Positions 2,434 through 48,342 of a stretch of DNA of 64,000 nucleotides are shown piece by piece. The notes beneath the pieces were generated by a model. That model was not told the origin of the DNA. It saw only the letters and a program-made list of their open reading frames with translations, and ran no database searches. Position 1 is the first letter of the stretch. Each line of letters begins with the position of its first letter. Where the stretch lies: NCBI RefSeq assembly GCF_006345805.1, contig NC_043001.1, positions 19,778,001 to 19,842,000 on the forward strand, read 5' to 3'. The translations under genes and the position numbers were made by a program. The stretch is from Octopus sinensis. Taxonomy: Eukaryota.

Positions 2434-5400
2434 TACGACAGGCTTCTTTCAGTTTCCGTCTACCAAATCCACTCACAAGGCATTGGTCGGCCCGGGGCTA
2501 TAGCAGAAGACACTTGCCCAAGATGCCACGCAGTGGGACTGAACCCGGAACCATGTGGTTGGTTAGCAAGCTACTTACTACACAGCCACTCCTGCGCCTC
2601 TCTTGTAAAAGTTTAATAAATGTGTGTGTGTGTGTGTGTGTACACATGATGACATGGCCATGTGGTTAAAATGTTTGTTTCAAAACCACATGATTTAGAG
2701 TTCGTTTTCATTGCCTAGACACTATTACCTGATGTCTTCAACTATAAGCTATGGGCTACATATGTGTATGTGCATGTGTGCGTGATCAGTGTGGCTGTGT
2801 CTGCTTCTCAATGTTAATAAAAGCTGTTATTTCAGAACTAATGCAAAAAAAAAAAAATAGTGTAAGGACGCATGCATATTATTAGGTAAAAGAAGCAGAA
2901 GATTTCATGCATATATAAATATCTAAAGGACTTAAGGACTTCCAGGAGAAATTTATAACAAATGGGCCCTATACACCAAATCCTTACCTGTACAGGTGCC
3001 GGGTCAACCAAGGGGGGATCATTCCAGCCTGAATGCTACAGAGATAAAAATGGAAGTTCTACAAGGGATACATTTATAGTGCACAAAGCTAAATTTAATA
3101 AGCATAGATGCAAAATACTTTAGATTTACATTCTCTTCGGGATAGACTTTGTCAATTAGAACTTGGCATCTTGGAGTCTTTTTTTCTCACATTGCAGACT
3201 TGTGGAACTTTTGATTTAACTGATAAGATGTACATATTCCTGGTTTAGTTATACAGCACACTCATTTCATGTTCTGAACCCAATATTGTATATATATATA
3301 TATATATATATACACACAATATATATATTACGACAGGCACCCTTGCCAACCCCCTTTGCTTGTGAAGACATGTTGGGGCAAGCGAAATCGAAATCGAATT
3401 GAACCAGCCAGGATCCCTGGTCTGGTGGTACGTAAAAAGCACTATCCGACTCGTGGCCGATGCCAGCACCGCCTCGACTGGCTTCCGTGCCGGTGGCACA
3501 TAAAATACACCAATCTGACCGTGGCCGTTGCCAGCCCCGCCTGGCACCTGTGCAGGTGGCACGTAAAAAGCACCCACTACACTCACGGAGTGGTTGGCGT
3601 TAGGAAGGGCATCCAGCTGTAGAAACATTGCCAAATTAGACTGGAGCCTGGTGCAGCCTTCTGGCTTCCCAGAACCCCGGTCGAACCGTCCAACCCATGC
3701 TAGCATGGAGAACGGACGTTAAACGACGATGATGATGATGATATCGTCATGATAGATCGTTAGCCACTACACACATTTTTTTCTCTGCTTTTTTTCTCTC
3801 CTTGTTTTTTCTCAAACCTGATCATGTAGGTTCCCTTGCCTATACTGATATCCAGCGTGTTCTCTCTCACACCTTGCGTAGCAGTATGTGCAGGTCTGTC
3901 AGTGGACTTATTCAGCATTGTAGGTCCCAACATCGAGATGGTTGGACTTTTGCTGGAAGGCTGATTTTAGGTCTGTGTGAAAGAACTTCTAGGTGCCTTG
4001 CAGGTCTTTGGAGCCATATGAGCCTTCATCAAACTGCTGGCATCAGTTGTTAGTTGTCGGAGCACTGCATCCTTCAAAACTTCCATGGTACACCTGATTT
4101 TCTCCCCTCCATACACACGCAAGCATGTATCTGACTCATACACTGTTCACTTTCCAGACATTTGTACATAACTGCATATGCTTTATACACACTTTTGACA
4201 AGTTGTGGTGCACCTGAGCACTGTATACAATAATTTCATTATTATTATTATTATTATTATTATCAGCAATGGGGAAACCAAGCTTAAAATGTTTTTACTG
4301 TGAAGTTTATCTAAGCAGGGGTCTTTGTCAATCTTGAGTTGACTTCTAACATGTGGAGAGAGGGAGAGAGAAGGATTTTTACAGCTTTCTCTTTATCTTG
4401 GGAGAATGGTTCTGGAAACATATTATGTAACCCAAACAACATGATGGAAAATACTTGACTTAACTCTATTTTTCAGGTCCTTTAGCACAAAAATATCGTA
4501 CCCATTCTGGTTCTGCAAATGCTGGTTATGGAATGGAAAACTACAACCAAACCATTGCCTTAAATCCAGATTATTCTAATAAAAGTTCATACCAACAACA
4601 GAGTTATCCTAGGTTTGTATATGGAGATATTTTATTAAAATTTCCAAATTACTACTGTTTATTGCATTTTATTACTACTATACTTTATTTTTATTGTTTA
4701 GTCAGGAAAAAAAAGATTATGCTCAGAACCTTGACTGGACCTTACAAATTGCAAGAGAACTCAGATGATTGGGAATTGTGGTTGATGCATGTTCTGGAGA
4801 AGCAGACATAGTATAGCTAATGAGAGAGAAAGAGAGTGTGTGTGTGTGTATAACTAGTAGTAGAAAGGAAAGCAGCGAGCTGGCAGAAACATTAGCACGC
4901 CGGGTGAAATGCTTAGCAGTATATTGTCTGTCTTTACGTTCTGAGTTCAAATTCCGCCAAGGTCGACTTTGCCTTTCATCCTTTCAGGGTCGATAAATTA
5001 AGTACCAGTTATGCACTGGGGTCGATGTAATCGACTTAATCCCTTTGTTTGTCCTTGTTTGTCCCCTCTATGTTTAGCCCCTTGTGGGCAATAAAGAAAT
5101 AAGAAAGGAAAAGTAAAGAGACAATGTGTCTATGAGCCAGAGATTGGCGTGTTGGCAAGTAAAACTTTATCAACCAACCAGATGACTTTCCTTTGGATAT
5201 GATTTAGGATATTCATGTGAACGTAGCAGCAGCATCCCAGATTTAGGAGCAGCATTCCATTGTGAGTTTCACTTAAGCCTTGTAGAAACTCAAAAGTGTT
5301 TACTCACTCTAAAGAGAAATGCTAGTTTTCACTCCACTTTTTATATAAGTTAACATCGGAAGCTTTTTTATATTTTTAAATTAGTAATAAGGAAAATGTT

Positions 5401-8152
5401 TCAGAAACATTTGAGCGAGGTCGTTGCCAGTGTTGCTGGACTGGCTCCTGTGCAGGTGGCACATAAAAAGCACCTTTTGAGCGTGGCTGTTGCCAGTACT
5501 GCCTGACTGGCCCTCTTGCCGGTGGCATGTAAAAGCACCCACTACACTCTCGGAGTGGTTGGTGTTAGGAAGGGCATCCAGCTGTAGAAACTCTGCCAGA
5601 TCAGATTGGAGTCTGGTGCAGCCATCTGGTTTGCCAGTCCTCAGTCAAATCGTCCAACCCATGCTAGCATGGAAAGCGGACGTTAAATGAAACAATGAAG
5701 TCTGTAGCTTCAAATAGAAACTGATGCAGGGTTGAGGGTGTGGAAAGGTGTTCCTTAGTCCTGTCACAAACAGGCTCACTTCTACTTGTGGCATGATAAA
5801 ATACACCCAAAGGACTCTGTATGATGAAAAAAGAGCATCTAACCACATAAAAATATATCAAAAAGTGGAATATACAAGCAAGACATGGACTCCACAAGTT
5901 GCATTGCAAGCTTCCCGTCTAGAAACTATATGGTCAGAGGTTTGATCCCCTACATGAACACCGTTGGCTGGTGTCCTCTACTATACACATATGCAGCAAT
6001 GAAGTATCACCACACTTTCAGCACACAGAAAGTGTCATATGTGGTACCTTGTATGGTTATAGCCCCTGTTCAGACGCCATATGGTTGAAGTCATTATCTT
6101 CATTAATTATCAATGAACAAACTTGATGGCCCAAAGCATCTTCTGTTTCCTTCCTTGTTTTTTTGGCAGTTGCTCAGTCATTATCAAAGTTTACAGATTA
6201 ACTATCAAATGTGTTCATTTTGTAGCTAACATGCTAGTAAAGGCTATTTATATGTGGGTTCTGTGATAAGTTGATATAGGATTTTGGTGGAGGGGTTTTG
6301 CTGACAATGTCATGGTTAGTAACAATGCCTTTTTGAGCAGGAGTTGTCTAGAGGACATAATTCTAATTTCATGCAGTTGATTTACTTTTCTTTGGTGTTA
6401 TATAAGGACATAACCTTTTCTCAGCGGAATTGTACTATACAAGACTTTGATATAAATTTTATTAAAGAGTTGTGCCAGTGGCATGTGTAAAAAGATTCAA
6501 GTGAGGTTGTTGCCAGTACCGCCTGACTGGCCCTCATGCTGGTGGCATGTAAAAGCATCCACTACACTCTTGGAGTGGTTGGCGTTAGTAAGGGCATCCA
6601 GCTGTAGAAACACTGCCAGATCAAGATTGGAGCCTGGTGCAGCCATCTAATTTGCCAGACCTCAGTCAAATCATCCAACCCATGCTAGCATGGAAAGCGG
6701 ATGTTAAACGATGATGATGATGTGAGTGCTTAGAAAAAAAAAGAAAGACTACATAAATTCAAGAATTTACCTGTAGACTATTTTTATAATTTTTGCTTAT
6801 TCATTTAGAAAAAAAATTAGAACTTTCTGATTAGATTTTGGGAATGAATTGATTCCTTATATTACAGAAATATACAAGAAATCACCTTTTTATTTCTCTG
6901 CATTTTAATTAAAATTGCACCTTTCAGTAATTAAAACAATAATCTCTTCTCTTCTATATTTTAGTCCAAATTCTTACCAAACTTCAAATACTTATCATCA
7001 ACAACAACCAATGCAGCCATCCAATGTATACAATCCAAATTCGGCACCAGGTAAAATATTTAATTTTGTCCTATGTAATAATATGCAAGTGTTGTATCAT
7101 AATAGTTTTGACAGGGTGCATGTGTTAATGATTACATAACAGGGTGGATACTGGTATCTTGAGATACATCATGATTTTGATTCATATCATTTGAGTGTTA
7201 CTTTTTCTCAGAGATTGTTTATTTTTCAACTTGCTTAAAACCAGAAACCAGTGAAGAAAATTCTATGAAATTATGTAGCATACTGGTATTGTGTAGAATG
7301 CATCGCTTGACCAGTTTCTTCCAATTCTAACATTGCATCCACATGTTTCAGTCTTAAATTATAGGTGAATAGCTTAGCAAGTATGGTTTGGTTACTAGCA
7401 TAATATTGTGATATCCATGATAGACATTAACAGGCAGAACAAAAATATATGGGAAAACAAGCACATTATCAGAAGTCTACAAGAACAAGTTACAACTTTT
7501 ATGTAGAATCAAGATCTGAAGTTGGGGCTTCTACATTTGTCTCTACTTACTGTCTCAATGATTAACCATGGCTCAATGGTTAGAGCATCGAGATTATGAT
7601 CGTCAGGTTGTGAGTTCGATTCCTGGACCGGGCTGCATGTTGTGTTCTTGAGCAAGACACTTTATTTCACATTGCTTCAGTTCACTCAGCTGTAGAAATG
7701 AGTTGTGATGTCACTGGTGCCAAGCTGTATTGGCCCCTTTGCCTTTCCCTTGGATAACACTGGTGGCGTGAAGAGGGGAGGCTGGTATGCATAGGTGACT
7801 GCTGGCCTTCCACAAACAACCTTGTCTGGATTTGTGCCTCGGAGTGTAACTTTGTAGGTGCAATCCCATGGTCATTCATGACAGAAGGGGGTCTCAACTG
7901 TCTTAATTTAAACATATACACTCAGATCCCCATCATTTCATCTTGTTACATATACACGCCAAACCTTCATAAAAATTTCAACCCAAATATATTGAGAAAT
8001 TAGTAATTATTTTATGCATTGAGACATAAATATACTCAAACTACAAAACAGATCATTGTTGTCAGTTGTGTAAAACATTAAAAAAATTGAATAAATTTAT
8101 AATTTACTTTACAAATGTGCTTAGCTTTCTAAGCTAGCAAGGATTAGATGTC

Positions 8153-8199
<47 letters not shown>

Positions 8200-11100
8200 C
8201 AGCCAAATACCCTATATATTGCTAACCCTTACCTGTTTTTCAAGTAATGGGTCCTTTAATCCATACATCCTCAAGAGCACAGGTCCAGCAAACTTGTTAA
8301 GAGGAAAAGAACAAACCTTGAGGATTATAGCTCAGAGCTTTTTCATTCAAAGTTCACAGGATATAAATTTGCACCCACTCACACACGACAGGCTTCATAT
8401 AGTTTCTGTCTAGCAAATTGACTCAAAAAGCATTGGTCAGCTCTGGTCCACAATAAAAGACTCAGAGGATGTTACACAATTGGACTGAAGTCAAGACCAC
8501 ATGATTGTTGGTTGTGAAGTGAACTTCTTAACCATAAGTCACATCTGCACCCAAACCAAATAACATCAACAAGTAATCATTTGTCTGATCTCTGTCTTTT
8601 AACTTGCAGAACATCAATTATACAATTAAAGTAGTCAACTTATTGAAACCCAAAAGCAAATTGTCACAAAAAAACCATTTGTTTTTCTTGTTAAAAACAT
8701 TCATACTGAAAATGTTATAGTAATTTAATGTATTAAAAGTTGTTTATACATTGGCAATTTTAGACATCTTTTCATTTTGATATTTCTGCTTTCTAGTGGC
8801 TCCACAAGCTTCTGCTCCAATGGGAGATATTCCTTCCTTCCAAGAATGAAACCTAACACACCTTGGAATGATCCACCTGTGTTTAAAGATAATGTGAACA
8901 ACTCACGTGTAAGTCAATCAAATCTAAAATGTGACACTGGTCTCGTATCCTATTTTGCAAAGCATTTTGTGTTTTTTCTTTTCTAATTATGTATTTAGTT
9001 TTTGTTGCAGAAAGTTCTTTTATAATGTGATATAAAGGTTCTTGACAAGAATCTTTTACCAAAATGTGATGGTTCTTAGATTGCTTGTTTATATAGTAAA
9101 AAACACTGCAACACTTTTCACATCTCAACTAGACCTTTTATTATTGATGTAACAATTCATTTTTCTCTTCATTATCTTTCATGCTGTCATTTCAACAAAT
9201 CAATTGAGAAACAAAAATTAAATGTTTGTAATTTCATTATTTTGTCATCTCATCAGAATTTATTCATTGAAATTGCTATTAACATATTCTCAGAGATGTT
9301 TTGTTACAGATAACTAACACTAAATTAGTATCGTCATGTATATTTATTCTGATGGTTGAATTACAAATAGCTTTTTGTATTATGTTTGCTTTAGGGATTT
9401 ACAAAAGTAACTTCTTACTTTTTCTGCTAAAAATATGTAGTAATTTTAATATTTTTCCTTCAAAACAGCTAGTGAATTACTATGCAGTCATGAAACCTAC
9501 CAGAAATAGTAGCCAAAAGCACATTAGATAACAATTACACCAGTTATACTTTAGTCTGAAATAAAGATTGGATAATTTGGGTTTGAATACCTTTGCTCGT
9601 AAATTTACTGGATCAATAATTGCCTCAGATTAAATAGCTTTTTTTTCTCAGAGCTTTTTAGGAATTTTGATTGTAAAAGATCACCACATTGGGTTTAGCA
9701 GTTTCTCTCACACCTTATTCAGAGTTACATGTTATAATATGTGATTATCATTTTTCTGATCTCCAAAATAGTAATAGCCCTTTGTACTCTAAGCACAAAG
9801 CTTGAAATTTTGAGGGAGATGGCCAGTTGATTACATCATCCCCAGTACTGAACTGGAACTTATTTCATCGAACCCTGAAAGGATTAAATACCAAATTGAC
9901 CTTGGCAGAATTTGAACTCAGAATGTAAAGCCAGAAGAAATGCCACTATGCATTTTGTCTGGCATGGTAACAATTGTGCCGGCTTTCTGCCTTCCACAAA
10001 ATAGTAATAATAATAAATAGTAATGAGCTTATTGTATAGTACTCAGGTGCTAAGTGCTTCTTTTACTTTGTTGCTCGTGTAAGCCTGTTGATATAATGAA
10101 GGCCGAAATTTATAGATACATATACTACTAATGAAAATAACATAATACAATAACTTAAGATTCATCATCATCATCATTTAACGTCCACTTTCCATGCTAG
10201 CATGGGTTGGACGATTTGACTGAGGTCTGGCGAACCAGACTCCAATCTGATCTGGCAGAGTTTCTACAGCTGGATGCCCTTCCTAATGCCAACCACTCCG
10301 AGAGTGTAGTGGGTGCTTTTATGTGCCACCGGCACGAGGGCCGGTCAGGTGGTATTGGCAACAGCCATGCTCAAATAGTGCTTTTTATGTGCCACCTGCA
10401 CAGGAGCCAGTCCAGCGACACTGGCGACGACCTCGCTCGAATGTTTCATGTGCCACCAGTACAAGTGCTAGTAAGGCGAAAAGCCGAAATGATGAAATAT
10501 AGTTTCAAGGTAAAAGTAAATTTAAATTGCTGTGTGTCATGTAACCAATGTTACTGGGAAAACTCTTTGATTACCTCAATTACCATTATTATTAATTTCT
10601 TACTGAAGTACAATATTTATAGAGGAAGAGAATACTTTTTTGCAAGGATAATAGCAGAGTCTCTCTCTTATTCTTTGACCTTTGTCTACTAACGTGGATT
10701 ACAGTTATATAAAAGTTAAAAGCTTGATATTTTTTATGGCATATGATTATTACTTTTATAATAGTCTGTGTTGTTTACTGTTCCTTACAAACTAAAATCA
10801 CAGAGGAAAATTTTTTAATATTTAAAAAAAATTTTAATTGTTATGATTTCATACCATTTTACTAACAGACAAGTTTGAAAATGTTAACTTCACCTTGTTC
10901 TCTTGAATTTTTCTCTTGATTTGCACTTGTTTCACTGAATTGAATTTGGATTGTGTCACAAATCACAACACAACACAAAGCAACATGTCATAAACTGAAT
11001 TAGATCAATAAACACCATTATGATAATGGTTGTGTGTTACACTTAATAAAAATTATGTTAACATGTTTTTTTTTTTCAAAGTAACATACGTAGATTAAGG

Positions 11101-14100
11101 AAAAACTGCAAATTAATCTGGTTATTTCCTTGGCGAACTTCTGTTTAGAAATTCTTATATTTGAAATAATAGAACATTTTTCAATAGATAGTATATGAAT
11201 AACATTTTAATAAGAATCATGCTGAACATCATTGTAGACTAAACATTTTTTTTTCCATATCTGTTCCAGTGTTTGGGGGTGAAATATTGCCCGAGAACTT
11301 TTCGTAGCAGTTTAGAATGTCTTAAGATATCTATTTTACTTGGGGCAAATGTTAGAACAAAATCCAATCTAAAACATTTGCAGGTTCTGTAAATATTTAA
11401 TAGATAAAGGTGAGATGAATCACTGATAAAGAAAGTCAAAGAAAGGCAAAAATTTTTCATTTATTTACCTTAACTTTGATAATAATTCTTGATAATATAA
11501 AACAGATTTTACCAGTTTGTTGACAAAGAAAAAAAACTATTGAATATCAAGAATTTGTCTTGTAAAATTATAAATCTACTTTCCAATAGGAATAGAAATT
11601 TTATGGTACTACAAATTTATAAATATGTATAATAATGTATATATTTTATAGCTAAATATGTCATAATATTCACTACTGGAGTGGAAAAAATTCACTTCAG
11701 TAGATGTAAAGTATGTTGAAAAATGTGTATACCTGAAGAACACTACAAATGGAAACGACAAAATTGAAGTTTAGTTTTGAACTATTTTTTAACTTTTAAA
11801 CCACTGTTAAGTTATTGTTTCAACTGCAATGGTTCGAAGCAGTGGAAATAAAGCAAACGATTGAAAAAGAACAAAATATAAATACACCGTTAGCAGTACT
11901 ATAAAATATTTTATATTTAAATATTCCATTGAGTTAAGAGTAATCTTTATAATTAACTATGAATAATCTAGAAAATTAAACAAATAGCTAATATTTACTA
12001 CAATTAGATGGAGTAAATATTGTCCATTCATAAAATAATTCTTCATTAAGGATACATATATATATATGTACTAGATTACCTATGACCTGTTGGGTCACCA
12101 ATAATTCAAGGTACCCAAAAAAACTGCATATCTCGGGAACCTGCGGTCCAATTTACATGAAACTTGTTTTATTCTGTTTGCATTCCCATTTCAATGGTAC
12201 CTCACTTTCAAAGTATTTTCTCATTATGCACCGGTTTGACTATTAAATTACAGACAAGCAAGCATGCAAACAAGCAATCATAACGGTACCTGAGAAAACC
12301 ATGTGTCTCAGGAAACTGTGGTCTGATTTACATGGAACTTGTCTTATTCAATTTGTAGTCTCATTTCAGGGGGACTACACAATAAAGGGCAATAACTCCA
12401 GGTTTCCACTGCTTCAATTTGTGGAAACAAACCCACAAAAACCATGTATCTTGGGAATCTTTGGTCCGATTTATGCAAAACTTATTTTACTCTGTTTGTA
12501 TTCACATTTCAGGGGTATCTTACTTTCAGAGGCTTTTCCCATTATGCGCCAGTTTGGCTGTATTAAGCACGCAAGCAAGCAATCACAGACTTTTAGTATT
12601 ATATAGATGTATATATCTCATTTAACATTTCCAAATAATAGACAAACTAATTGACATGTAAATAACAGTTAATGATTTTGTGTATTTTTTAAAAATTTTA
12701 ACAAAAGAAAATTTATTTTATAAAACTATTATATTATGTTTTCAACAATTGATAAAATAATTTTTCCTGCTTGTTATATTATTTTGCAAATGTTGCTTAA
12801 TGCAAGCTAGAATGTGGTTATTAGTTACCTCTGCACTTAATGCCTGCGTTGCCTTAAGGTTTTATACAATATTTCCCTTGTGAGAATGTGGTAGTTACAT
12901 TTGTATTGAGTTATCAATCTCAATATCTGTAACCATTTTTTTTCCCTAAGTGCTGGATCGAAGGAAAGGGCAGCACTTGTGGCCTTTGCAGGGCCTTCTA
13001 GACTGGTGAGATTGATGCCATTAATGGTACTCTTAAAACTTTGTATGTTAAACACGTGCTGGAAAGATAGAGCAGGAAGGGCATTCGGGAGAGGTTCCAA
13101 AGAGTTGATGTTCTGGGATGGAAGGACTTGCATAGTGATTAGTGTGAAGCTTAGGGAGCTGAACACAACAACAGTGATGAGGAAAAGAGAGGTGAGCAGA
13201 ATAGGAATGCTTGAGAGTTGGGGGCATGAGCCCAGGCAGCTCTGAGGAGCAAAAGCCAGATGGTAGCAGTAGAAGAGAGGGGGGTAGACAGCGTGCCTAA
13301 GAATCAGTGGTTGGAGCATGTCTGTGAGTAACTCTATGTCAGTCAGTCAAGGGCTCTTTTCTAGATGTACTCTGGGTTGTCTCATTACTATTTTGGTCCA
13401 TGACTGCTAGCTTTGCATCAAAGATAGTGTGTTCAGAGCAGTTAATGTTTATTTGGATATATGAGAGTAGGAAACAAAGCCCTGATGATTGACTTCAAAT
13501 GATATAAACAAGAATAATACATCATAGGATGGGGATAAGCCAACTGCAATAAACAGACTGCCAACTTAGAAACATCAAAACCTATATAATATTTATAGAA
13601 GACATTAAAGGAGATATACAGCTCTGTTATGAATAAAGACTGAAGATTGTGATAGCATGCACACTGCCAATAAACTAGTTGACATTTTCTGGTTAGCTTT
13701 AGATGGGAAATGATAAAAAGAAGATGTAGTGATTTGAATAGGGTAAAATTAATCCATTTCGTGTATATAAATATACTTTGTTTTGGAGTTGATGTACAAA
13801 ATAATGAAACTATAAAATATATAATTAACCTTGCTCAAATCATATAACGACTTGTGTGTTTGTGTGTGTGTGTAATAGTGGATTTCTATTAACAAAGATT
13901 CTGTTATTCAATCAACCAAATTACCAGCTCCTGAATTAATGTGTAATGGACTGAGTATTCTAAACATGTGTACCCTTATTGTAATTCTCAGGCAGAGCCA
14001 GCATGACACAGGGTGTGACAAGGCTGTGCCTTCTTGAACTGCTGAGATAATCCACCCAATAGGCTTCTACAGATATAGTAACATATGATCAAGAGGCCAC

Positions 14101-17100
14101 ATAATGGAATTGAACCCAGGACTTTGTGGTGGTGCTAAGAACTTCTTAATCATATTATACCTCTGTGTGTGCGTGTGTGTGGGTGTATTTATTTATTGGA
14201 CTTGGTGAGAGCTTATGGTGACTGGTGTATCTCAGTTGTTCTGTTACTGATTATCATTTGATCTTTCTTAATCTAAGTAAATCTTCACTCCAACATAGGG
14301 TGTATTTATATATATATATATATATAGGGAGAGTTTACGAAAAAAAACAAAAGACGAAGACAGGTGGTGTACAAAACAAACAGATGTATTAGTATAACGC
14401 TCAGGAATAGAAAAAGTCTTTTACATTTCGAGCCTACGCTCTTCTACAGAAAGGGACACAGAAAAAACAAGGAGAGAAAAAAAGCAGAGTAAAAAATGTG
14501 TGTAGTGGCTAACGATCTATCATGACGATAGATATATATATATTGTGTGTGTATATATATATATATATTATATATATATATTATATATATATATACATAC
14601 ATACATACACAATATTGGGTTCAGAACATGAAATGAGTGTGCTGTATAACTAAACCAGGAATATGTAGATCTTATCAGTTAAATCAAAAGTTCCACAAGT
14701 CTGCAGTGTGAGAAAAAAAAGACTCCAAGATGCCAAGTTCTAATTGACAAAGTTTATCCCAAAGAGAATGTAAATCTAAAGTATTTTGCATCTATGCTTA
14801 TTAAATTTAGTTTTGTGCACTATAAATGTATCCCTTGTAGAACTTCCATTTTTATCTCTGTAGCATTCAGGCTGGAATGATCCCCCCTTGGTTGACCCGG
14901 CACCTGTACAGGTAAGGATTTGGTGTATAGGGCCCATTTGTTATAAATTTCTCCTGGAAGTCCTTAAGTCCTTTAGATATTTATATATGCATGAAATCTT
15001 CTGCTTCTTTTACCTAATAATATGCATGCGTCCTTACACTTTTTTTTTTTTTTGCATTAGTTCTGAAATAACAGCTTTTATTAACATTGTTTATCTATAA
15101 ATATTTCATAAGACTTTCTAAAACTCTTCTTTTAATGAATCAGTTTCTTTAAATCCATTTTGTTATTTAACATTCTCTGCATGAAACTCAACAAGCATGT
15201 TTTCATTATAAATATTTCATATTTAATTCTTCTTTTATGTTTAATATTGTTTATGTCTGAGGGTAAGTAAATAACAAATGATGTCACTATATACACTATA
15301 CACTGAACTGAAAAAATATTGTTTCTAGAATCTTTCTAGAAAAGATTCTAGAAACAAAATGTTTAATCTCTGAATAATGCAATCCTTGATTTATGCAAAC
15401 AAACCAAGAATATTTGATGTTATGCATTAGTAAGATTTCTAGTCATCACTTATTTATAAAGCCATCAACCAACTATGATTTTTAAAAATTCATCATCATC
15501 AATCATCATCGTTTAATGTCCGCTTTCCATGCTGGCGTGGGCTGGATGGTTTGTCCGAGGACTTTCAAGCTGAGAGGCTGTACCAGGGTCCAATCTGATC
15601 TGGCAGAGTTTCTACAGCTGGATGCCCTTCCTAACGCCAACCTCTCCAAGAGTGTAGTGAGTGCTTTTTACATGTCAACCAGCACGGGAGCCAGTCAAGT
15701 GGCACTGGTACCAGCCATGCTCAAATGGTGCTTTTTGCATGCTACCAGCATGGGTGGCACTGGCATTGGCCACACTTGAATGGTGCTTTTTACATGCCAC
15801 CAGCACAGGTGGCAGTCGGGCGATACTAGCATTGGCCATGCTCAAATGGTGCCAGTCAACTTATACAAAATGGTAACTGAAAGATACTAGAAAGTTACAA
15901 GAGCAAAAAACTCTATGTAGTCACTGGACTTGCTATGAATAGTTGCCAAATCTCCTTCAAACCTCACTCTGCTTTCTCAAACGTGGAAGGTAACATTGGA
16001 GAATGTACTCCTAGCTATACTATGAGGCTGAGAATATGCATGGTTATGGCTCAATACTTTTGATCATTTGTCTGTTCAATCAAAGCTGACTTAAAGCTAA
16101 TCAACAATAATAACCAAAGATTAACCCTTTCATTACCAACCCAGCTGAAACCGGTTCTGGCTCTGAGTACAAATGTTTTGTTTTCATAAGTTTTGAATTA
16201 AAATCTTCCACCAAACCTTAGTCACAATTTATGTTCCTAACACTAGCTCAATGATAACTAAGCTATTTCGCTAAATTCTTTTGTTATATTTAAAATAATT
16301 GAAAGAAACACAGAGCATCTCAACAGAAATACAGTAACGAAAGGGTTAAAGCTAATCAACAATAATAACCAAAGATTAAGTGGGGAAAAAGCACTTTTGA
16401 AGAAAAATAACTGCTGATGAGTATGCTCTTTGATGTTGTAAACACAGAAAATATAATCCTGAAAATAATTTCAAATAAAATTTGTATGTTTATGCCTATA
16501 AGTGTCAACTTTACTGATACTCTATCACCGCTACCTTCAACATCAATCTTATGTGAAACAACAAAGAAATCAAGAAGCCATGGTAGCCTTAATGTGGTTG
16601 TTAGAGATATCAATCAATCCAATCCTTTTACATGGGACTTGATTTGTTATAAATAGCAATCAGATTTCCCTGCCACCTTGAAAATAAAAGGAAGCATACG
16701 TCAAATAATGTTCTAGATGTAATGTATGGAACATTTTTAATCATAAATTTGCTCCATTAAAAACATTTTTAATCATAAATATGGTCCATTAAAAACATTT
16801 TTAATCATAAATATGGTCCATTAAAAACATTTTTAATCATAAATATGGTCTATAGCCCCGAGCTGACCGGAGCTTTGTGATTGAATTCGGTAGGTGGAAG
16901 TTACTGCCGTGTGTGTATATGTGCGTGTAGGTGCTTGTGCCTCTCCCAAAGAGAGAGAGAGGGGGGTCCATTAATAACATTTTTAATCATAAATCTGGTT
17001 CATCAAGAATACAGAATAAATTGATGATAGTTTCTTTAATGTTTCAAGTTTTCTAAACTGTATGTGATTTCTTTTTTTTTTTTTTTGTAAAGTTTCTGTT

Positions 17101-20100
17101 GTTATTATGAACCAACAAAGTCATTAAACCAATAAGGGAACTTCTCTGTGGTCACTTGTGCTGCTTTTTTATTGTATTTTGTGACTGTCAGAGGTTGAAG
17201 GACCAGCCCACCTGACATTTGGAAGGTCTCTGAGACTGAAACCATGGCCCAAGAGTTACCCTCCGACCAGAGACATGTAAGCTAAATGCTTACAACAGAA
17301 TGGACTCTGCTAAAGCACTTAAGGACCTAGTGGTACTATATTAAATTTTCAGCCAGATTCTGCATAGTTTCCATCCACCCAGTTTCACTCACAATACTTG
17401 GGTTGACCCATGGCTGTGGTAGAAAACACTTGCTCAAGGTGTCCTGCAGTGGGATCTAGTCTAGAGCCTTAAGAGTGTGAAATAAACTCATTAACCACAT
17501 AGTTATATTTCTTAGAAATATAGCAGTTGTACTTAATCTGGTTTTCCCACCATCTTAAGAAAAATGTCTGTATGATTGCTACTTCAGAAGCTTGATAAGA
17601 CTATAAATAGTATCTCTATTATTTGATATGCTATCTATAGATAGCATATTTCTGAAGCTCTAGTATGAAACCTTGTAGAAACATCTTAACAACTATTTCA
17701 TATCTTTAACAATGCCATGGGAAGTATTTCATTTCAGTGACCAGGTTGTAGGTGTATAAGAAAACATTTTGACATTATATAGCATACTGTCAACAAAACA
17801 CAAAATTTCATATAGTTTGTGTGTGTGGGCGTGTGTGTGTGTTGACTTTTCTCACAGTGTAAAACATTTTAGTTTCAACACATGGTCTCATAGCAAGCCG
17901 TTTGTCAAGCATTTAAAATGCCAACAGTTTTATAATTATGTTGGTGTGTAGTCAAGTCTCACAACTGGTTCTAGTTGTGGGAATATTTATTTTACAACTG
18001 TATCTAAAAACAGCTCTTTAGTAAAATGTTTAGTTTAAGCCATTGTGGTTTTAGCCTTACGACTGCTTTTATCCTTTTCTGCTTTAGCTTGGAGAAGGTG
18101 CAGTGCCCATGATTTTCCCAGGCCCTCCAAGCTGGTGAGATTCATATGAATCCGTCTGAGCATTAATAGACTGATATCTAAGGGAATAATGTAGATGGAG
18201 AGGAAATTCCTAATGATTGGTACTCTACAGAAGAAGGATTGGTTTAAAAGGGCTAATGTAAATAAAGTGGGGTTGGATTTGGCAATAAGATGAGAGCTCA
18301 GGTTCAGTCCCTCTCTATAGCATCTGAGGCAAGCTTTGAAGGGGAAACTGGCTAGACAGGAAATATGAAAGACTCAAATGAATTGTTCTTGCAATTCAAA
18401 GGGTTTGTCATGCTAATTTAGTCTGAGAACTATGTTAAGAGTACATGTGCTTTTTGAGTACTCAGCCTTTTACATGCTAATTTAATGAGTAGGTAGTTCA
18501 GTTGTTCAAATAACTGAGCACTCATCATTAAAACTGATGGAGGACCCTTTGTGCTAGTTCAGAGGACCAGAGGGCTTTCAAAACAACAACAGAACAGGCA
18601 GTGAGAGGAGACAGGATGTCTAAGCTCCACTACAAAAAGACTTTCCGAGATACCAATATCTTTTTGCCTTAAAAGATAGAACATTAAATTGACATGTTAT
18701 TCATATTGACCTGCGAGTATCCTTCTAAAACAATTGTCAAGACTGACGAAGGACAGTGGTGCTACGACTATTGATAAATTTAAGCAACTAATAATGTAAC
18801 AGGATATGAGCCATTGTCAGTTTCTATAATAACGAAATTATTGTATACAGTGCACAGGTGCACCACAACTTGTCAAAAAGTGCATATAAAATATATGCAG
18901 TAATGTACAAATGTCTGGAAAGCGAACAGTGTATGAATCAGATATATGCTCGTGTGTGTATAGAGGGGAGAAAATCAGGTGTAGTGTTGGCAAATCTCAG
19001 GGGCCTGGAAGTTTTGAAGGATGCAGTGCTCCAACAACTAACAACTGATGCCGGCAGTTTGTTCCATACTTCAGCAACTCTTAGCGTGTACACAGTACAA
19101 GTTGTAGACAATCACTCACTCGTTTGTTTTACATTTACAACCCACACACAAGTACATGCCGAGGCATTGCTTTACAGCTGGATGCCCTTCCTTTCACCAA
19201 CCTTTCTCTTTTTTTTTTTTTTTTTTTGGTAAGAAGTTTTCATTCCACTTGTCTTCAAGTGCGGGGCTGCTGTAATATTTGTTGACACAAAAATGTGAAC
19301 AAACATCACTGTCCATAGCTTAGCACTGTGCAGAATGCAGACATTCAATTGGCATGCACATGTATGCAGTACACTCTGCAAGGTGGTGGGCATTAGGCAG
19401 GGCATTCAGCTGCAAAAGCCATGCCGAAACAGACAGTGGAGCTTGGTGCAGTCCTGTCAAACCATCCAGTCCATGCCAGCATGGAAGATGGATGTTAAAT
19501 GATGATGATGTGCATACATACACACACATGAAAGGCTTTGTGCAATTTCCATCTACCTAATTCATTCCCAAAGGATTGCTCAACCAGGGGCTACAGTAGA
19601 AGACATTTGCCCAAGGTGCCATACTCAAGGACTGAACTCTAAACCTCATGGTTTTGAAGTGAACTTCTTCACCAAACTGCCAAGCCTGCTCCAATCAATG
19701 ATGATAATTCATATTGATTAATAATGCTCAACTTTATATCAATATAAAAAAAGAATGTGTTTCTTTTTACAAATTATTTTCTGCCTTTATTTCTTTCATT
19801 AACTATGTATTCACCAAAGAGTGAATATTTGAACTTTCTTATAATGCTAAAATTCATTAACCATTTAACAACTATCACATTGTATTAATATGATATGGTT
19901 TTCATATTCAGTCTCCTGTAGGTGCACCAAACGTCATATATTTGATAGAGACTGAAAATTAGTTCAGCTAAAAATCGCCTTTTAATATCAATGGTTTCTT
20001 CTACCTGCAGACTTACCTGAATTAAGCTTATGTTATTTTTCGAAAATTACCTGTAGAGCTGCTGTTAATCTTTGCTTATGTAAATTGCAGCAATTTGAAT

Positions 20101-23100
20101 CTCCAAATGCAATTCCCAATCAAATGTATGGAATTCCTGGAAACACTGATCAACAACAACAACCTGTCAACAGTTATCCAAACATTTACAACCCCCAGGA
20201 ACATCAGCCTCAATTGCCGGTAAGATATCTTTATATATAAAAGAGAAGTTGTGTGTCTGTCTCCTACAATTTAGATTCCTAACTACTCCCACATTTTGCA
20301 GTGCAGTTTAACCAAAGCCGGGTATCTTATAGCCGTGATTCATATCGAGCCCTTCTGGGTATTAGCGCGCGTTTACGATTTAAAAGAAAATTTACCATAA
20401 TTTTTTTCCATTTTAATGCAATTTTTCGCTATTATATAAGGGAAGTAACTCTCTAAAAATGTCTGCGATGAATCAACGATTTAAAAAAAAATTTACCATA
20501 ATTTTTTTCCCATTTTTAATGCATTTTTTTGCTATTTTTTGGCTATAACTCTCTAAAAATGCTTATATAGTTATTTCCCTTACAAACCCGAGCAACACCG
20601 GGCGATACTGCTAGTTTAATAATATTTTACTTTTATGATTTCACTTATAAATTTAAACACCTGTATGTTTTTTTATTAAAACTTATTAAAATATTTTACT
20701 GTTTGTAGCAATCAGCACCTGTAGTTAACCAAGCTCCAGAACCTGTACCTGAAGTTGTAAAAGGACCGTTGCCAAATGAACATCAAATTTTACAAGACAT
20801 ATTTGATGCTTTGGTTGAAAACTGTTTAAAAGTTGCATCAAATGCTGTAAGTAAAACAATGAAACATCCTTACTCTTTACTCTTTTACTTGTTTCAGTTA
20901 TTTGATTGTGGCCATGCTGGAGCACCGCCGTTAGTCGAGCAAATCGACCCAGGGAATTATTCTTTGTAAGCCCAGTACTTATTCTATCGGTCTCTTTTGC
21001 CGAACCGCTAAGTGACGGGGACATAAACACACCAGCATCGGTTGTCAAGCAATGCTAGGGGGACAAACACAGACACACACACACACACACATACTCATAT
21101 ATATATATATACATATATACGACAGGCTTCTTTCAGTTTCCGTCTACCAAATCCACTCACAAGGCATTGGTCGGCCCGGGGCTATAGCAGAAGACACTTA
21201 CCCAAGATGCCACGCAGTAGGACTGAACCCGGAACCATGTGGTTGGTTAGCAAGCTACTTACCACACAGCCACTCCTGCACCTATTTCATAATTTTTAAT
21301 CTAAATATGCACTGCAATACAGACTTATTCTTTGTAAGCCTAGTACTTATTCTATCGGTCTCTTTTGCCGAACCACTAAGTTACGGGGACCTAAACACAC
21401 CAGCATTGGTTGTCAAGTGATGATAGGGGGACAAACACAGACACACAAACATATACACACACATACATATATACGATGGGCTTCTTTCAGTTTCCGTCTA
21501 CCAAATCCACTCACAAGGCTTTTGTCGGCCCACGTCTATAGTTGAAGACACTTACCCAAGCTGCCACGCAGTGGGACTGAACCCGGAACCATGTGGTTGG
21601 TAAGCAAGCTACTTACCATCACAGCCATTCCCGTGCCTATAGTAATATATAGTAATAATAATCTAACAAGTTCTGAGATTCTTAATTTTTTTTCTTTTTT
21701 TAATTATTTTAACAAAGCATGGTTTCCATTTATTTACTTCTTTCCCTGATATTTCATGATGTCGGACGTCCACTTCACAGTTTTTTAAATGCTGATTTTT
21801 TATCTCTTTTTCGTATTTAGCAAACTAAAAGAAAACTGGAAGATGTAGTTAAGAAACTGGAAGCTTTATATGACAAGCTAAGAGAAAATTCGGTATGATA
21901 CTTTGCAGTTTTATAACTCCCCTCTCCCCCCTCTCCCTCTCTCCTTCACAGACTTGTACTTTCATCATTATCATCATCATCATCGTTTACCGTCCATTTT
22001 CCGCCCTAGCACGGGTTGGACGGTTCGACCGGGGTCTGGGGAGCCAGGGGCTGCTCCAGGCTCCAGTCTGATCTGGCAGTGTTTCTACAGCTGGATGCTG
22101 CCCTTCCTAACGCCAACCACTCCGCGAGTGTAGTGGGTGCTTTTTACGTGCCACCTGCACAGGTGCCAGAGGGGTCTGGCATCGGCCGCGATCGGTTGGT
22201 GCTTTTTATGTGCCACTGGCACAGAAGGGCTTAGCCGTGTGGTTACTTCGTTAATCTGAACTCTCGTTGTACTTTGTATTGCAATTATCATTAATTTCAG
22301 ATAATTGTTTTAACTTCAGGCTTCAATTTCACCAACTGACCTTTTCTTCTTTGATTGAAGTAGCTCTGCAGTGATCTTCAGAAAAATTATAATTCCTTGA
22401 TCAATTGGCCTCTTGTTTATAGATGAGGTTAATAGTCTAAAAGCATAATCTTTTTAACAATACCTAATGTCAGTCATTCGATGATCTTTAACCCTTTCGT
22501 TACCAACCCGGCTGAAACCGGCTCTGGCTCTGTATACAAATGTCTTGTTTCCATAAGTTTTGAATTAAAATCTTCCACCAAACCTTAGTCACAATTTATG
22601 TTTCTAACACTAGCTTAATGATAACTAAGTTATTTTACTAAATTCTTTGTTTATATTTAAAGTAATTGAAAGAAACACAGAACATCTCAAAATAAATATA
22701 GTAACGAAAAGGTTAAACTTCTAATTTTCTAGTTATCATTGTATTGGTATTACAACAGAATGTTTTGTCACATATTTCTGTAGCTGTAATCCAGAACATT
22801 TAACTTTGATATTAACTTATCACTAAATATACATAATATGGAGGTGCAATGGCCCAGTGGTTAGGGCAGTGGACTCATGGTCGGAGAATCACAGTTTCGA
22901 TTCCCAGACCAGACGTGTGTGTTTATTGAGCGAAAACACCTAAAAAGCTCCAGGAGGCGCCGGCAGGGGGTGGTGGTGACCCCTGTTGTACTCTTTCACC
23001 CCAACTTTCTCTCACTCTTTCTTCCTGTTTCTTGAGTAACGCTGTGATGGACTGGCGCCCCGTCCAGCTGGGAGGTGGGGGAACACGAACCTGGCTAGGC

Positions 23101-31365: not shown

Positions 31366-31413
31366 GTGTGTATATATATATATATACACTCTCCCTATAT
31401 ATATATATATATA

Positions 31414-31590
31414 GGGAGAGTTTACGAAAAAAACAAAAGACGAAGACAGGTGGTGTACAAAACAAACAGATGTATTAGTATAACGCTCAGGAATAGAAAA
31501 AGTCTTTTACGTTTCGAGCCTATGCTCTTCTACAGAAAGGGACACAGTAAAAACAAGGAGAGAAAAAATGTGTGTAGTGGCTAATGATCT

Positions 31591-31594
<4 letters not shown>
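31414..31594 (-). mobile_element. Hammerhead-like repeat unit, copy 2
   Basis: The minus strand reads CTTT-CTGTAGA-A-GAGC-ATAG-GCTC-GAAA-CG-TA-AAAG at 31503-31539; (AT)n on both sides. Confidence 0.6.
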
Positions 31595-31629
<35 letters not shown>

Positions 31630-31857
31630 CTTCTGCACGCAAAAATTTTTTTTCTCTCCTTCTTTCTGTGTTTTTTTTTCTCTGTGTATCTTTCTGTTGA
31701 AGAGCGTAGGCTCGAAACGTTAAAGACTTGTTTTATTTATATTTCCTGAGCGCCATACTAATACAATTGTTTGTTTGTATTCCACCTGCCTTCGTCTTTT
31801 GTTTATTTTCCGTAAACCTGCCTTCGTCTTTTGTCTATTTTCATAAAGCTTCCCGTT
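31630..31857 (+). mobile_element. Hammerhead-like repeat unit, copy 3 (related subfamily, inverted relative to copy 2)
   Basis: TCTTT-CTGTTGA-A-GAGC-GTAG-GCTC-GAAA-CG-TT-AAAGA at 31689-31726. Confidence 0.6.
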
Positions 31858-31869
31858 ATATATATATAT

Positions 31870-37921: not shown

Positions 37922-38066
37922 ATATTTCGGAATGGTCATATTGCCAGTTTAGCCAATAAAAACACACGCACTATATATTTGGTGTTATTTTGCTTCAGTG
38001 TTATTTATTTTTTACATTAATCTTAATCTTATTTCAGCCAGAGTTCTTTCGTCACACTCCTGTGTG

Positions 38067-38577
38067 TCCTTTGTTTTCTTCTTTCATATTTGCGTCTCTC
38101 CTTACTAAACAATATCTGTTTCAACACACGACTTCACATAAAAAATCAGTGGTCCTTTGTTTCCTTCTTTCTTATTTGCGTCTCTCCTTACTAAACAATA
38201 TCTGTTTCAACACACGACTTCACATAAAAAATCAGTGGTCCTTTGTTTCCTTCTTTCTTATTTGCGTCTCTCCTTACTAAACAATATCTGTTTCAACACA
38301 CGACTTCACATAAAAAATCAGTGGTCCTTTGTTTCCTTCTTTCTTATTTGTGTCTCTCCTTACTAAACAATATCTGTTTCAACACACGACTTCACATAAA
38401 AAATCAGTGGTCCTTTGTTTTCTTCTTTCTTATTTGCGTCTCTCCTTACTAAACAATATCTGTTTCAACACACGACTTCACATAAAAAATCAGTGGTCCT
38501 TTGTTTCCTTCTTTCTTATTTGCGTCTCTCCTTACTAAACAATATCTGTTTCAACACACGACTTCACATAAAAAATC
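38067..38577. repeat. 86-bp minisatellite, about 6 near-identical copies
   Basis: Unit gtcctttgtttccttctttcttatttgcgtctctccttactaaacaatatctgtttcaacacacgacttcacataaaaaatcagtg; ORF-track starts recur every 86 nt. Confidence 0.95.
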
Positions 38578-45144: not shown

Positions 45145-45357
45145 ATGTCTCAAACACACAAATTCCACGTGGATATGACCTGTGATGGCTGTACGTCAGC
45201 TGCGAAGAGGGTCCTCTCAAAGGCCGAGAATATTGAGAAAGTTGAAGTGAGTTACGAGACGAAAACTGTATCAGTTACAACTACACAATCGGCTGACTAT
45301 ATTTTGGAAGTTTTAAAGAAAACCGGGAAAACTGTCACACATGTCGAAACACTGTAG
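45145..45357 (+). CDS. ATOX1: Copper transport protein ATOX1 (HMA-domain copper chaperone), single coding exon
   Basis: 70 aa MSQTHKFHVDMTCDGC...LEVLKKTGKTV has the MxCxxC Cu(I) motif and the C-terminal LKKTGK typical of ATOX1/Atx1. ATG has A at -3; ORF is intact. Confidence 0.93.
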   Translation: MSQTHKFHVDMTCDGCTSAAKRVLSKAENIEKVEVSYETKTVSVTTTQSADYILEVLKKTGKTVTHVETL

Positions 45358-48308: not shown

Positions 48309-48342
48309 CAGTTTTTGAATTACATTGGTTGTGATGACTATC

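What the first reader, a model, noticed from the sequence alone, without database searches (positions are those of the whole stretch)
2809..15089. Inverted copy of a SEC31 coding microexon and both its splice sites inside the same pre-mRNA
Seen: 2809-3289 is the reverse complement of 14609-15089 with only a handful of substitutions (e.g. gacaaagtCtatcccGaagag vs gacaaagtTtatcccAaagag), so it looks like a real, recent duplication rather than a collapsed assembly copy. The segment is host sequence, not a repeat family. It holds the 48-nt exon 14864-14911 (HSGWNDPPLVDPAPVQ) with about 255 nt of upstream and 178 nt of downstream intron; the antisense exon copy (2988-3035) is identical. Known: the Trp-Asn of the Sec31 WND motif is the element that stimulates Sec23 GAP activity on Sar1, long intramolecular dsRNA is the ADAR substrate, and coleoid cephalopods recode extensively by A-to-I editing. 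Inference: the pre-mRNA can form a ~480-bp duplex that (i) buries this exon's acceptor and donor, causing skipping, (ii) exposes its codons and the acceptor AG to editing, and (iii) loops out exons B-D (334 nt), favouring back-splicing to a circRNA. This would be a self-made cis-antisense switch on a functional COPII motif.
Basis: partly seen in the sequence, partly recalled or inferred. Interest (0 to 1): 0.85.

Follow-up and report, generated by a model that had tools for sequence, protein, structure and literature searches.

The report
Inverted copy of a Sec31 microexon
An octopus-type Sec31 gene carries, 11 kb upstream in an earlier intron, a nearly identical backwards copy of one of its own 48-base exons and both splice sites. 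The copy is real and looks like a repair or replication accident of a kind known from human disease genes. Whether it regulates anything is untested.

Summary
Bases 2809-3328 are the reverse complement of 14570-15089 (97% over 521 nt). The core has 5 substitutions and 2 one-base indels in 481 nt, and a perfect 229-bp block covers exon 14864-14911 and both its splice sites.

The duplication is larger than reported. The source is 14460-15089 (630 nt) and the copy is 2809-3812, split by a 413-nt SINE. Both junctions show microhomology (CAA and TTCT, so TTCTCAA sits at each end). One breakpoint cuts through an unrelated repeat. This points to a DNA-level, template-switch type insertion, not a transposon or a retrocopy.

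Both arms lie in the same Sec31 pre-mRNA, in intron A-B and around cassette exon E. Together they could form a duplex of about -860 kcal/mol, by far the strongest of 19 inverted pairs in the gene.

Function is not shown. The arms are 11.3 kb and three exons apart. Exon E carries a second WNDPP motif; the orthologous one is in exon D, so skipping E would not remove the only motif. Human CHM and MANBA inverted duplications that cause exon skipping are direct precedents.

Verdict: a real, probably near-neutral young structural variant, and a new member of a known kind.

The parts
2809..3328 (-). Upstream arm: inverted copy of 14570-15089 (intron + exon E + intron + TA microsatellite), lying in Sec31 intron A-B
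   Evidence: 97.1% over 521 nt; core has 5 substitutions + 2 one-base indels in 481 nt
2988..3035 (-). Antisense copy of microexon E, 48/48 identical, with copies of its acceptor and donor
2859..3087 (.). 229-nt stretch perfectly complementary to 14812-15039; it encloses exon E, 52 nt of the upstream intron and 128 nt of the downstream intron
3329..3741 (+). SINE-like repeat with a (GAT)n tail, inserted in the TA microsatellite of the copy only and absent from the source
   Evidence: 19 related copies in the window
3742..3812 (-). Distal end of the inverted copy, matching 14530-14460 (70/71)
   Evidence: (I13)
2805..2811 (.). Left junction TTCT|CAA: the CAA is shared by the source end and by the target sequence beyond the insertion point (3-nt microhomology)
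3809..3815 (.). Right junction TTCT|CAA: the TTCT is shared by the source end and by the target sequence before the insertion point (4-nt microhomology)
14460..15089 (+). Source segment of the duplication (630 nt). Its left breakpoint lies inside an unrelated ~200-nt repeat (14326-14525) flanked by (TA)n
14864..14911 (+). Microexon E, HSGWNDPPLVDPAPVQ, 48 nt, phase 0-0 cassette. Acceptor Y-tract 15/19; donor CAG|gtaagg matches the U1 consensus at 8/9
8797..8908 (+). Exon D, which carries the orthologous WNDPP motif (KPNTPWNDPPVFKD); one of the three exons between the arms
4477..4612 (+). Exon B, first exon inside the loop
6965..7050 (+). Exon C, inside the loop
1231..1396 (+). Exon A, upstream of the intron that holds the inverted copy
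20091..20219 (+). Exon F, phase 0-0; it joins in frame to either D or E

Best explanation
This is a genuine, evolutionarily young, DNA-level inverted segmental duplication inside the Sec31 gene of an octopod.

Origin (inferred from sequence): a 630-nt piece of the D-F intron (half of a small repeat, a TA microsatellite, 255 nt of intron, cassette microexon E and 178 nt of intron) was copied in reverse orientation into the A-B intron between ...GCTTCT and CAAACC.... The mechanism was microhomology-mediated template switching or break repair. A SINE later landed in the copy.

RNA-level consequence (inferred, not shown): in those pre-mRNAs where intron A-B is still present when the polymerase reaches exon E, the arms can zip into a duplex of about 0.5 kb, 229 bp of it perfect. 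That duplex would bury E's splice sites and favour skipping of this optional exon. It would be a promiscuous ADAR substrate. It would also bring the D donor close to the B acceptor, allowing back-splicing or loop-out skipping.

Because of the 11.3-kb separation and the three intervening exons, I expect this in only a minority of transcripts. I regard the element as a near-neutral structural variant with side effects rather than an evolved switch.
For: Shown by sequence:
- The inverted identity and its true extent.
- Unique flanks on both sides.
- Junction microhomologies of 3 and 4 nt, giving TTCTCAA at both ends. The joint chance is about 6e-5 if ends were joined at random.
- The source breakpoint at 14460 cuts through an independent repeat unit, so the copied unit is an arbitrary genomic segment.
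- There is no poly(A) and no TSD-plus-terminal structure, and only two copies in the window.
- The SINE is present only in the copy.
- Both arms lie within one Sec31 gene model, with exons A-I in consistent phase.

Computed:
- Cofold of the arms gives -861.8 kcal/mol with 508 intermolecular pairs, against -98 and -96 for the arms alone.
- It is the top-scoring of 19 inverted pairs in the 25-kb gene part (878 bits vs 351) and the only one that touches an exon.

Precedent:
- CHM exon 12: a 1,752-bp inverted duplication with 8- and 4-bp microhomologies, exon skipping and a predicted hairpin.
- MANBA: a 13.1-kb inverted duplication with exon skipping.
- Inverted Alu pairs and loop-out skipping.
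Against: - No reads, second assembly or sister species could be examined, so misassembly and polymorphism remain open.
- The assembly has at least one probable 1-nt error nearby, in exon D.
- The SINE in the copy is 7% from the window consensus. That fits poorly with an insertion younger than a 1% diverged duplication, unless the master differs from that consensus or gene conversion has homogenised the arms.
- Nothing here shows that the duplex forms in vivo. By my own recollection, not checked here, Eperon et al. 1988 found that hairpins affect splicing in vivo mainly when the loop is short. I did not read that paper; it appears only in the reference list of PMC13019027.
Confidence: 0.62

Rival explanations
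1. One reading: the inverted copy is a functional, selected cis-antisense switch. It controls inclusion and A-to-I recoding of the WN-motif exon and drives a B-D circRNA, thereby tuning COPII GTPase stimulation.
For: - A 229-bp perfect duplex covers the exon and both splice sites, with very favourable energy.
- E encodes a W-N-D-P-P motif.
- In vertebrates a regulated microexon (24c) sits right next to the WND motif of SEC31A and affects secretion.
- Octopods edit heavily.
Against: - No RNA evidence is available.
- E is a second motif; the orthologous WNDPP is in exon D.
- The clean block around the exon is not significant (p about 0.08).
- The arms are 11.3 kb apart and in different introns.
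- About 1% divergence indicates a recent event with no time-tested conservation.
- Looping out B-D (334/335 nt, not a multiple of 3) would be harmful if it were frequent.
Confidence: 0.08
2. Assembly artefact: the upstream inverted segment is a chimeric or misplaced piece created by the assembler, not present in the animal.
For: - A probable 1-nt indel error in exon D shows that the assembly is imperfect.
- The two indels between the arms are in homopolymers.
- No independent data could be reached.
Against: - There are 5 true substitutions between the arms.
- A private 413-nt SINE sits inside the copy.
- Both junctions are clean, with microhomology in unique sequence.
- By my own recollection, fold-back chimeras give adjacent palindromes, not an insertion 11 kb away.
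Confidence: 0.07
3. Mobile-element or RNA-mediated capture: the exon and its flanks were picked up by a transposon (Pack-type or Helitron-like), or copied from unspliced pre-mRNA or intron RNA by a LINE reverse transcriptase. Further copies would then exist in the genome.
For: - The window is dense in SINE and LINE fragments; a LINE 3' fragment lies 218 nt from the copy at 4030-4268.
- The copy contains unspliced intron-exon-intron, as a skipped-exon intron RNA would.
Against: - There are no terminal inverted repeats, no poly(A)/poly(T) at either end, and no second family member in 64 kb.
- The 218 nt between the copy and the LINE fragment is unique.
- The breakpoints show microhomology to the target rather than a clean TSD.
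Confidence: 0.05
4. Older duplication kept similar by gene conversion between the arms: the event predates the SINE insertion by a long time, and the about 1% divergence understates its age.
For: - The SINE in the copy is 7% from the window consensus, while the arms differ by about 1%.
- All substitutions lie on one side of the exon.
Against: - The window consensus mixes subfamilies, and this SINE is the closest of 19 copies to it.
- The substitution clustering is not significant.
- The short 71-nt segment beyond the SINE is also 98.6% identical.
Confidence: 0.12

Closest known systems
CHM exon 12 intragenic inverted duplication (choroideremia family; PMC8756506)
   Same: Both have an inverted copy of one exon plus flanking intron inserted in the same gene, short microhomology at both junctions (8 and 4 bp there, 3 and 4 nt here), and a predicted exon-sequestering pre-mRNA hairpin.
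   Different: In CHM the copy lies about 290 nt from the exon (274-nt loop) in the adjacent intron, skipping was observed in patient mRNA, and the result is disease. Here the loop is 11.3 kb with three exons inside, the exon is an in-frame optional cassette, and no RNA data exist.
MANBA 13.1-kb intragenic inverted duplication (PMC6549551) and Solnick-type inverted-repeat exon skipping
   Same: Both involve a template-switch origin with junction microhomology, and a large complementary region within one pre-mRNA proposed to force exon skipping.
   Different: The MANBA arms are kilobases long and contain several exons. Here the arm is 0.5-0.6 kb with one microexon.
Reverse-complementary matches flanking exons (inverted Alu or SINE pairs) that promote back-splicing and loop-out skipping (PMC8330042, PMC13019027)
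   Same: The arms sit in introns on both sides of exons B-D. The same gene also has ordinary inverted SINE pairs, e.g. 5404-5690 / 10174-10447.
   Different: The arms are unique host sequence, much longer and more perfect than the SINE pairs (878 vs 351 bits), and one arm contains an exon.
ADAR editing-site complementary sequences and hyper-edited inverted repeats (PMC9989829, PMC5625713)
   Same: An intronic sequence complementary to an exon in the same transcript; young inverted repeats are the main ADAR substrates across Metazoa.
   Different: By my own recollection, classical ECS elements are short, imperfect, close to the exon and conserved. This one is a 229-bp perfect, distant, very young duplicate, which predicts promiscuous rather than site-selective editing.
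Drosophila hpRNA loci and plant proto-miRNA genes born by inverted duplication of their target gene (PMC10317233, PMC10292708)
   Same: A fragment of a gene is duplicated in inverted orientation, creating long dsRNA that matches the parent gene.
   Different: Those are separate transcription units with adjacent arms, and they produce siRNAs. Here the second arm is the parent exon itself, 11 kb away in the same pre-mRNA, and no small-RNA data exist.
Vertebrate SEC31A microexon 24c (PMC12265942)
   Same: A short, frame-preserving, alternatively used exon in the disordered active fragment of Sec31, immediately downstream of the WND motif.
   Different: 24c (39 nt) does not itself contain a WN motif and is regulated by RBM47. 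Exon E (48 nt) encodes a second WNDPP, and its usage is unknown.

Membership tests
Intragenic inverted exon duplication causing pre-mRNA hairpin (CHM/MANBA type) | Inverted copy of an exon with its flanking intron inside the same transcription unit | tested here: met
   gene model
Intragenic inverted exon duplication causing pre-mRNA hairpin (CHM/MANBA type) | Microhomology at both breakpoint junctions (replication-based template switching) | tested here: met
   CAA (3 nt) and TTCT (4 nt)
Intragenic inverted exon duplication causing pre-mRNA hairpin (CHM/MANBA type) | Observed skipping of the duplicated exon in mature mRNA | not testable with these tools
   No transcript data; no cephalopod Sec31 in the protein libraries
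Intragenic inverted exon duplication causing pre-mRNA hairpin (CHM/MANBA type) | Arms close together (loop of a few hundred nt, as in CHM) | tested here: not met
   11,241-11,319 nt between the arms, with exons B, C and D inside
Complementary-intron-driven circRNA locus | Reverse-complementary sequences in the introns flanking the circularised exons | tested here: met
   The arms lie in intron A-B and in the D-F interval, bracketing B-D
Complementary-intron-driven circRNA locus | Back-splice junction reads (8908 to 4477) | not testable with these tools
   No RNA-seq access
ADAR editing-site complementary sequence | Intronic sequence that base-pairs with the edited exon | tested here: met
   229-bp perfect complementarity over exon E; cofold -861.8 kcal/mol
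ADAR editing-site complementary sequence | A-to-G mismatches in RNA, and conservation of the pairing between species | not testable with these tools
   No RNA data and no related genomes available
Transposable element / repeat family | Multiple dispersed copies with defined termini, TSD, or poly(A) | tested here: not met
   Only two copies in 64 kb; no TIR; no poly(A); the breakpoint lies inside another repeat. Genome-wide copy number was not testable
hpRNA / endo-siRNA hairpin locus | Adjacent inverted arms in an own transcript that yield ~21-nt siRNAs | tested here: not met
   The arms are 11.3 kb apart within the host pre-mRNA. Small RNAs were not testable
Sec31 active-fragment WN motif | Trp-Asn (WND/WNDPP) in the proline-rich region, between the solenoid and the C-terminal domain | tested here: met
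   Exon D TPWNDPPV and exon E SGWNDPPL. 72 of 153 relatives have exactly one such motif and none has two. GAP stimulation was not testable
Known structured RNA family (Rfam) | A match at gathering score anywhere in the window | tested here: not met
   0 matches

The most novel reading that the evidence does not exclude
Octopods have a lineage-specific cassette microexon that adds a second Sar1-GAP-stimulating WN motif to Sec31. In this lineage a self-templated inverted copy has been retained as a long, perfect editing and masking partner. Intron-retention kinetics and ADAR activity (for example with temperature) would then set how much of the two-motif isoform is made, or whether its Asn is recoded.
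Probability: 0.06. Interest if true: 0.8.

Novelty: new member of a known kind. Interest (0 to 1): 0.4.

Why it matters
If the junctions are confirmed, this is a natural, apparently tolerated counterpart of the pathogenic CHM and MANBA inverted exon duplications, and it sits in an animal with very active ADAR editing. It offers a clean in vivo test of how far apart two perfect complementary arms can be and still affect splicing, editing and back-splicing. The affected exon is optional and in frame, so effects can be read out without lethality. Separately, a cassette exon that adds a second WNDPP motif to Sec31 would interest COPII biology, given the regulated microexon next to the WND motif in vertebrate SEC31A. 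As it stands, however, only the DNA structure is established.

Tried and rejected
1. Cross-species and independent-data checks all failed.
- The protein search with spliced exons returned only 6 distant Sec31 proteins and no cephalopod.
- The exhaustive representative search returned 150 listed hits (152 distinct relatives when combined), again with no cephalopod.
- Exact look-ups of the ATOX1-like ORF and of three ORFs spanning the junctions found nothing on record.

2. I tested whether exon E is a recent duplicate of exon D. There is no nucleotide similarity beyond the motif: local score 34, against 33 +/- 5 for shuffles.

3. I tested whether the mismatch-free block around the exon indicates selection or conversion. 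It is not significant (p about 0.08).

4. I looked for an A-to-G bias between the copies, which would suggest an edited RNA intermediate. The differences are mixed transitions plus one transversion, with no such signature.

5. I tried to date the SINE in the copy against a window consensus. The result was inconclusive: 92.9%, the highest of 19 copies, but far from about 99%.

6. I looked for strong donor-like sites created on the sense strand by the inverted copy. None matched the consensus at 7/9 or better.

7. The Rfam scan of the whole window gave no family.

8. I considered a 7-nt target-site duplication (TTCTCAA). I rejected it because both halves are also present at the ends of the source, which fits microhomology rather than a TSD.


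Full report
**Observation.** The repeat finder lists the pair 2846-3185 / 14714-15053 (340 nt, 99% complementary), with adjoining pairs 3179-3328 / 14570-14719 and 2809-2857 / 15041-15089. Self-BLAST merges them into one hit, 2809-3328 against 15089-14570, 97.1% over 521 nt. The antisense exon copy 2988-3035 is identical to 14864-14911. A mismatch-free run of 229 nt (2859-3087 / 15039-14812) encloses the exon and both splice sites.

**True extent.** The copy does not stop at 3289 or 3328. After a 413-nt SINE-like element (3329-3741, (GAT)n tail, 19 related copies in the window), the homology resumes: 3742-3812 matches 14530-14460 at 70/71 positions. The source unit is thus 14460-15089 (630 nt) and the copy is 2809-3812. 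The SINE sits in the TA microsatellite of the copy and is absent from the source.

The left 70 nt of the source belong to an unrelated ~200-nt repeat flanked by (TA)n (14326-14525). That repeat has a 97% copy at 31396-31595 and an inverted copy at 31647-31875. The breakpoint at 14460 cuts through the middle of it. The duplicated unit is therefore an arbitrary stretch of genomic DNA, not a mobile element's own unit. The flanks of the copy (2600-2808 and 3813-4029) and of the source (15090-15500) are unique in the window.

**Junctions.** The four sequences are as follows.
- Left junction: gtctgcttct|CAATGTTAAT.
- Right junction: TTGTTTTTTCT|caaacctgatc.
- Source ends: gataaa|CAATGTT and TTTTTTCT|gtgtccc.

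The inferred empty site is gtctgcttct^caaacctg. The first 3 nt of the insert (CAA) equal the target sequence after the insertion point. The last 4 nt (TTCT) equal the target sequence before it, which is why TTCTCAA appears at 2805-2811 and at 3809-3815. Under random joining the two coincidences have a joint probability of about 1/64 x 1/256.

A true 7-nt target-site duplication does not explain why both halves are also present at the source ends. There is no poly(A) or poly(T), no terminal inverted repeat, and no A-to-G bias between the copies. The simplest origin is microhomology-mediated template switching or break repair. This is the mechanism proposed for the human CHM inverted duplication (8- and 4-bp microhomologies) and the MANBA one. 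This step is inferred from sequence.

**Gene context.** The plus strand of 1-24,685 encodes the C-terminal half of Sec31. Exon boundaries follow AG/GT and reading-frame continuity, and the exons align with gastropod and other Sec31 proteins:
- A 1231-1396
- B 4477-4612
- C 6965-7050
- D 8797-8908
- E 14864-14911
- F 20091-20219
- G 20709-20846
- H 21821-21892
- I 24503-24685 (stop)

The C-terminal part hits Pfam PF07304, as one of the Sec31 relatives does. E, F, G and H all start and end in phase 0. E has a 15/19 pyrimidine tract and a donor CAG|gtaagg that matches the U1 consensus at 8/9, as good as or better than its neighbours. E is therefore a credible in-frame cassette, but its use in mRNA could not be checked.

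The upstream arm lies in intron A-B and the downstream arm surrounds E. Exons B, C and D, and 11.2-11.3 kb, lie between them. A retroelement ORF in the window is most similar, among named proteins, to Octopus vulgaris (84%) and O. bimaculoides (80%) sequences. This supports an octopod origin.

**The WN motif.** The pattern TGGAAYGAYCCNCC occurs three times in the window: exon D (8864), exon E (14873) and the antisense copy (3013). Exon D's ...SFQE-KPNTPWNDPPVFKD aligns with the single motif region of gastropod Sec31 (SYQDRPAETAWNDPPIVQEK), so D holds the orthologous motif and E adds a second one 17 residues later. Among 153 Sec31 relatives, 72 have exactly one WN[DE]PP and none has two. D and E share no nucleotide similarity outside the motif.

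Masking or editing E would modulate an extra copy, not remove the motif that stimulates Sar1 GTP hydrolysis. The comparison with vertebrates is still suggestive: SEC31A has a regulated 39-nt microexon (24c) just downstream of the WND motif that affects lipid secretion.

**RNA potential.** Cofolding the two 520-nt arms gives -861.8 kcal/mol with 508 intermolecular pairs, against -98 and -96 kcal/mol for the arms alone. The best SINE pair in the same pre-mRNA gives -446 kcal/mol. Of 19 inverted pairs in the first 25 kb, this is by far the strongest (878 vs 351 bits) and the only one that overlaps an exon.

If the duplex forms, several consequences follow from established knowledge:
- It would hide the acceptor and donor of E.
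- By my own recollection, a near-perfect duplex this long is edited promiscuously rather than site-selectively. That would put the 9 adenosines of E at risk, including AAT (Asn) to D, S or G.
- It would juxtapose the D donor and the B acceptor, which favours back-splicing or loop-out skipping.

Young inverted repeats are the main ADAR substrates across animals, and octopus recodes far more than other metazoans.

**Why I do not accept the switch model as the best explanation.**
1. Nothing here shows that the duplex forms. The upstream arm sits in an intron whose 3' splice site is transcribed about 10 kb before the downstream arm. By my own recollection, not checked here, Eperon et al. 1988 found that hairpins affect splicing in vivo mainly when loops are short. 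I did not read that paper; it appears only in the reference list of PMC13019027. In the CHM precedent the loop is 274 nt.
2. The arms differ by only about 1%, so there is no evolutionary record of retention.
3. The clean block around the exon is within chance (p about 0.08).
4. Frequent looping-out of B-D (334 nt as assembled) would shift the frame of an essential gene, so strong pairing would be harmful.

I therefore rank a near-neutral young structural variant first, with partial RNA-level side effects: probably detectable hyper-editing in intronic reads, and possibly reduced inclusion of E.

**Caveats.**
- No reads, alternative assemblies or sister genomes could be reached.
- The assembly contains a probable 1-nt deletion in exon D. 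In the frame set by A-C it reads ...SFQE then TGA, and the WNDPP follows in the +1 frame. One extra A would restore SFQEMKPNTPWNDPP.
- The two indels between the arms are in homopolymers and may likewise be errors.
- The SINE inside the copy is 92.9% identical to a window consensus, the highest of 19 copies but not obviously as young as the duplication. The master may differ from that consensus, or gene conversion may have kept the arms similar.
- Misassembly seems unlikely, given the substitutions, the private SINE and the clean junctions, but it is not excluded.

**Comparison and novelty.** The closest known cases are the pathogenic intragenic inverted exon duplications of CHM and MANBA. These share inversion, microhomology junctions and a predicted exon-masking hairpin. 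More broadly, reverse-complementary intronic matches drive circRNA formation and exon skipping. This case differs in arm distance, in affecting an optional in-frame microexon, and in occurring in an octopod. It is a new member of a known kind. No Rfam family is present.

**Verdict.** The DNA observation is confirmed and extended. The origin is explained with reasonable confidence. The functional reading is plausible in principle but unproven and overstated. Interest is moderate.

Noticed in passing
window 8797-8908 (exon D), around 8843-8848: In the frame set by exons A-C, exon D reads VAPQASAPMGDIPSFQE then a TGA stop. The conserved KPNTPWNDPP follows in the +1 frame. One extra A (GAATG to GAAATG) would restore a sequence that aligns with gastropod Sec31. 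This is probably a 1-nt homopolymer error of the assembly. Alternatively, skipping the 86-nt exon C also restores the frame.
   Followed up: partly
window 8864-8877 and 14873-14886: One Sec31 gene has two sense WNDPP-coding stretches: exon D and cassette microexon E. None of 153 Sec31 relatives examined has two such motifs. E shares no nucleotide similarity with D beyond the motif.
   Followed up: partly
window 45145-45357 (+): An uninterrupted 70-codon ORF encodes an ATOX1-like copper chaperone (HMA domain, E 7.4e-12, MTCDGC motif). It is apparently intronless. The exact protein is not on record in the look-up collection.
   Followed up: partly
window 14326-14525, 31396-31595 and 31647-31875: A ~200-nt repeat is embedded in (TA)n microsatellites. 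Two direct copies are about 97% identical, and a third, inverted copy lies next to the second one, forming a local palindrome. It resembles a MITE but is unclassified.
   Followed up: partly
window 5404-5690 and 10174-10447: An inverted pair of SINE copies (287 nt, 89.5%; 214 nt at 93%) brackets exons C and D of the same gene. It is a conventional complementary pair that could also promote looping or back-splicing.
   Followed up: no
window 38066-38577: A tandem array of six 86-nt units, 98% identical.
   Followed up: no
window 48338-49261, 54729-56186 and 57746-58497: Retroelement ORF fragments. 48338-49261 has RVT_1 and a sub-threshold PHD finger (22.4 vs 24 bits); its closest named relatives are Octopus vulgaris (84%) and O. 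bimaculoides (80%) proteins. The other two look similar but were not scanned.
   Followed up: partly
window 53606-54091 and 665-1147: Local tandem duplications of repeat-derived sequence: 184 nt x 2.6 copies at 96%, and 253 nt x 1.9 copies at 90%.
   Followed up: no
window 2625-2645 and 2750-2805: (GT)n and imperfect TG/CA-rich tracts lie immediately upstream of the insertion point. The source breakpoints lie next to an A-rich run and a (TA)n tract. Such sequences might favour fork stalling; this was not tested.
   Followed up: no
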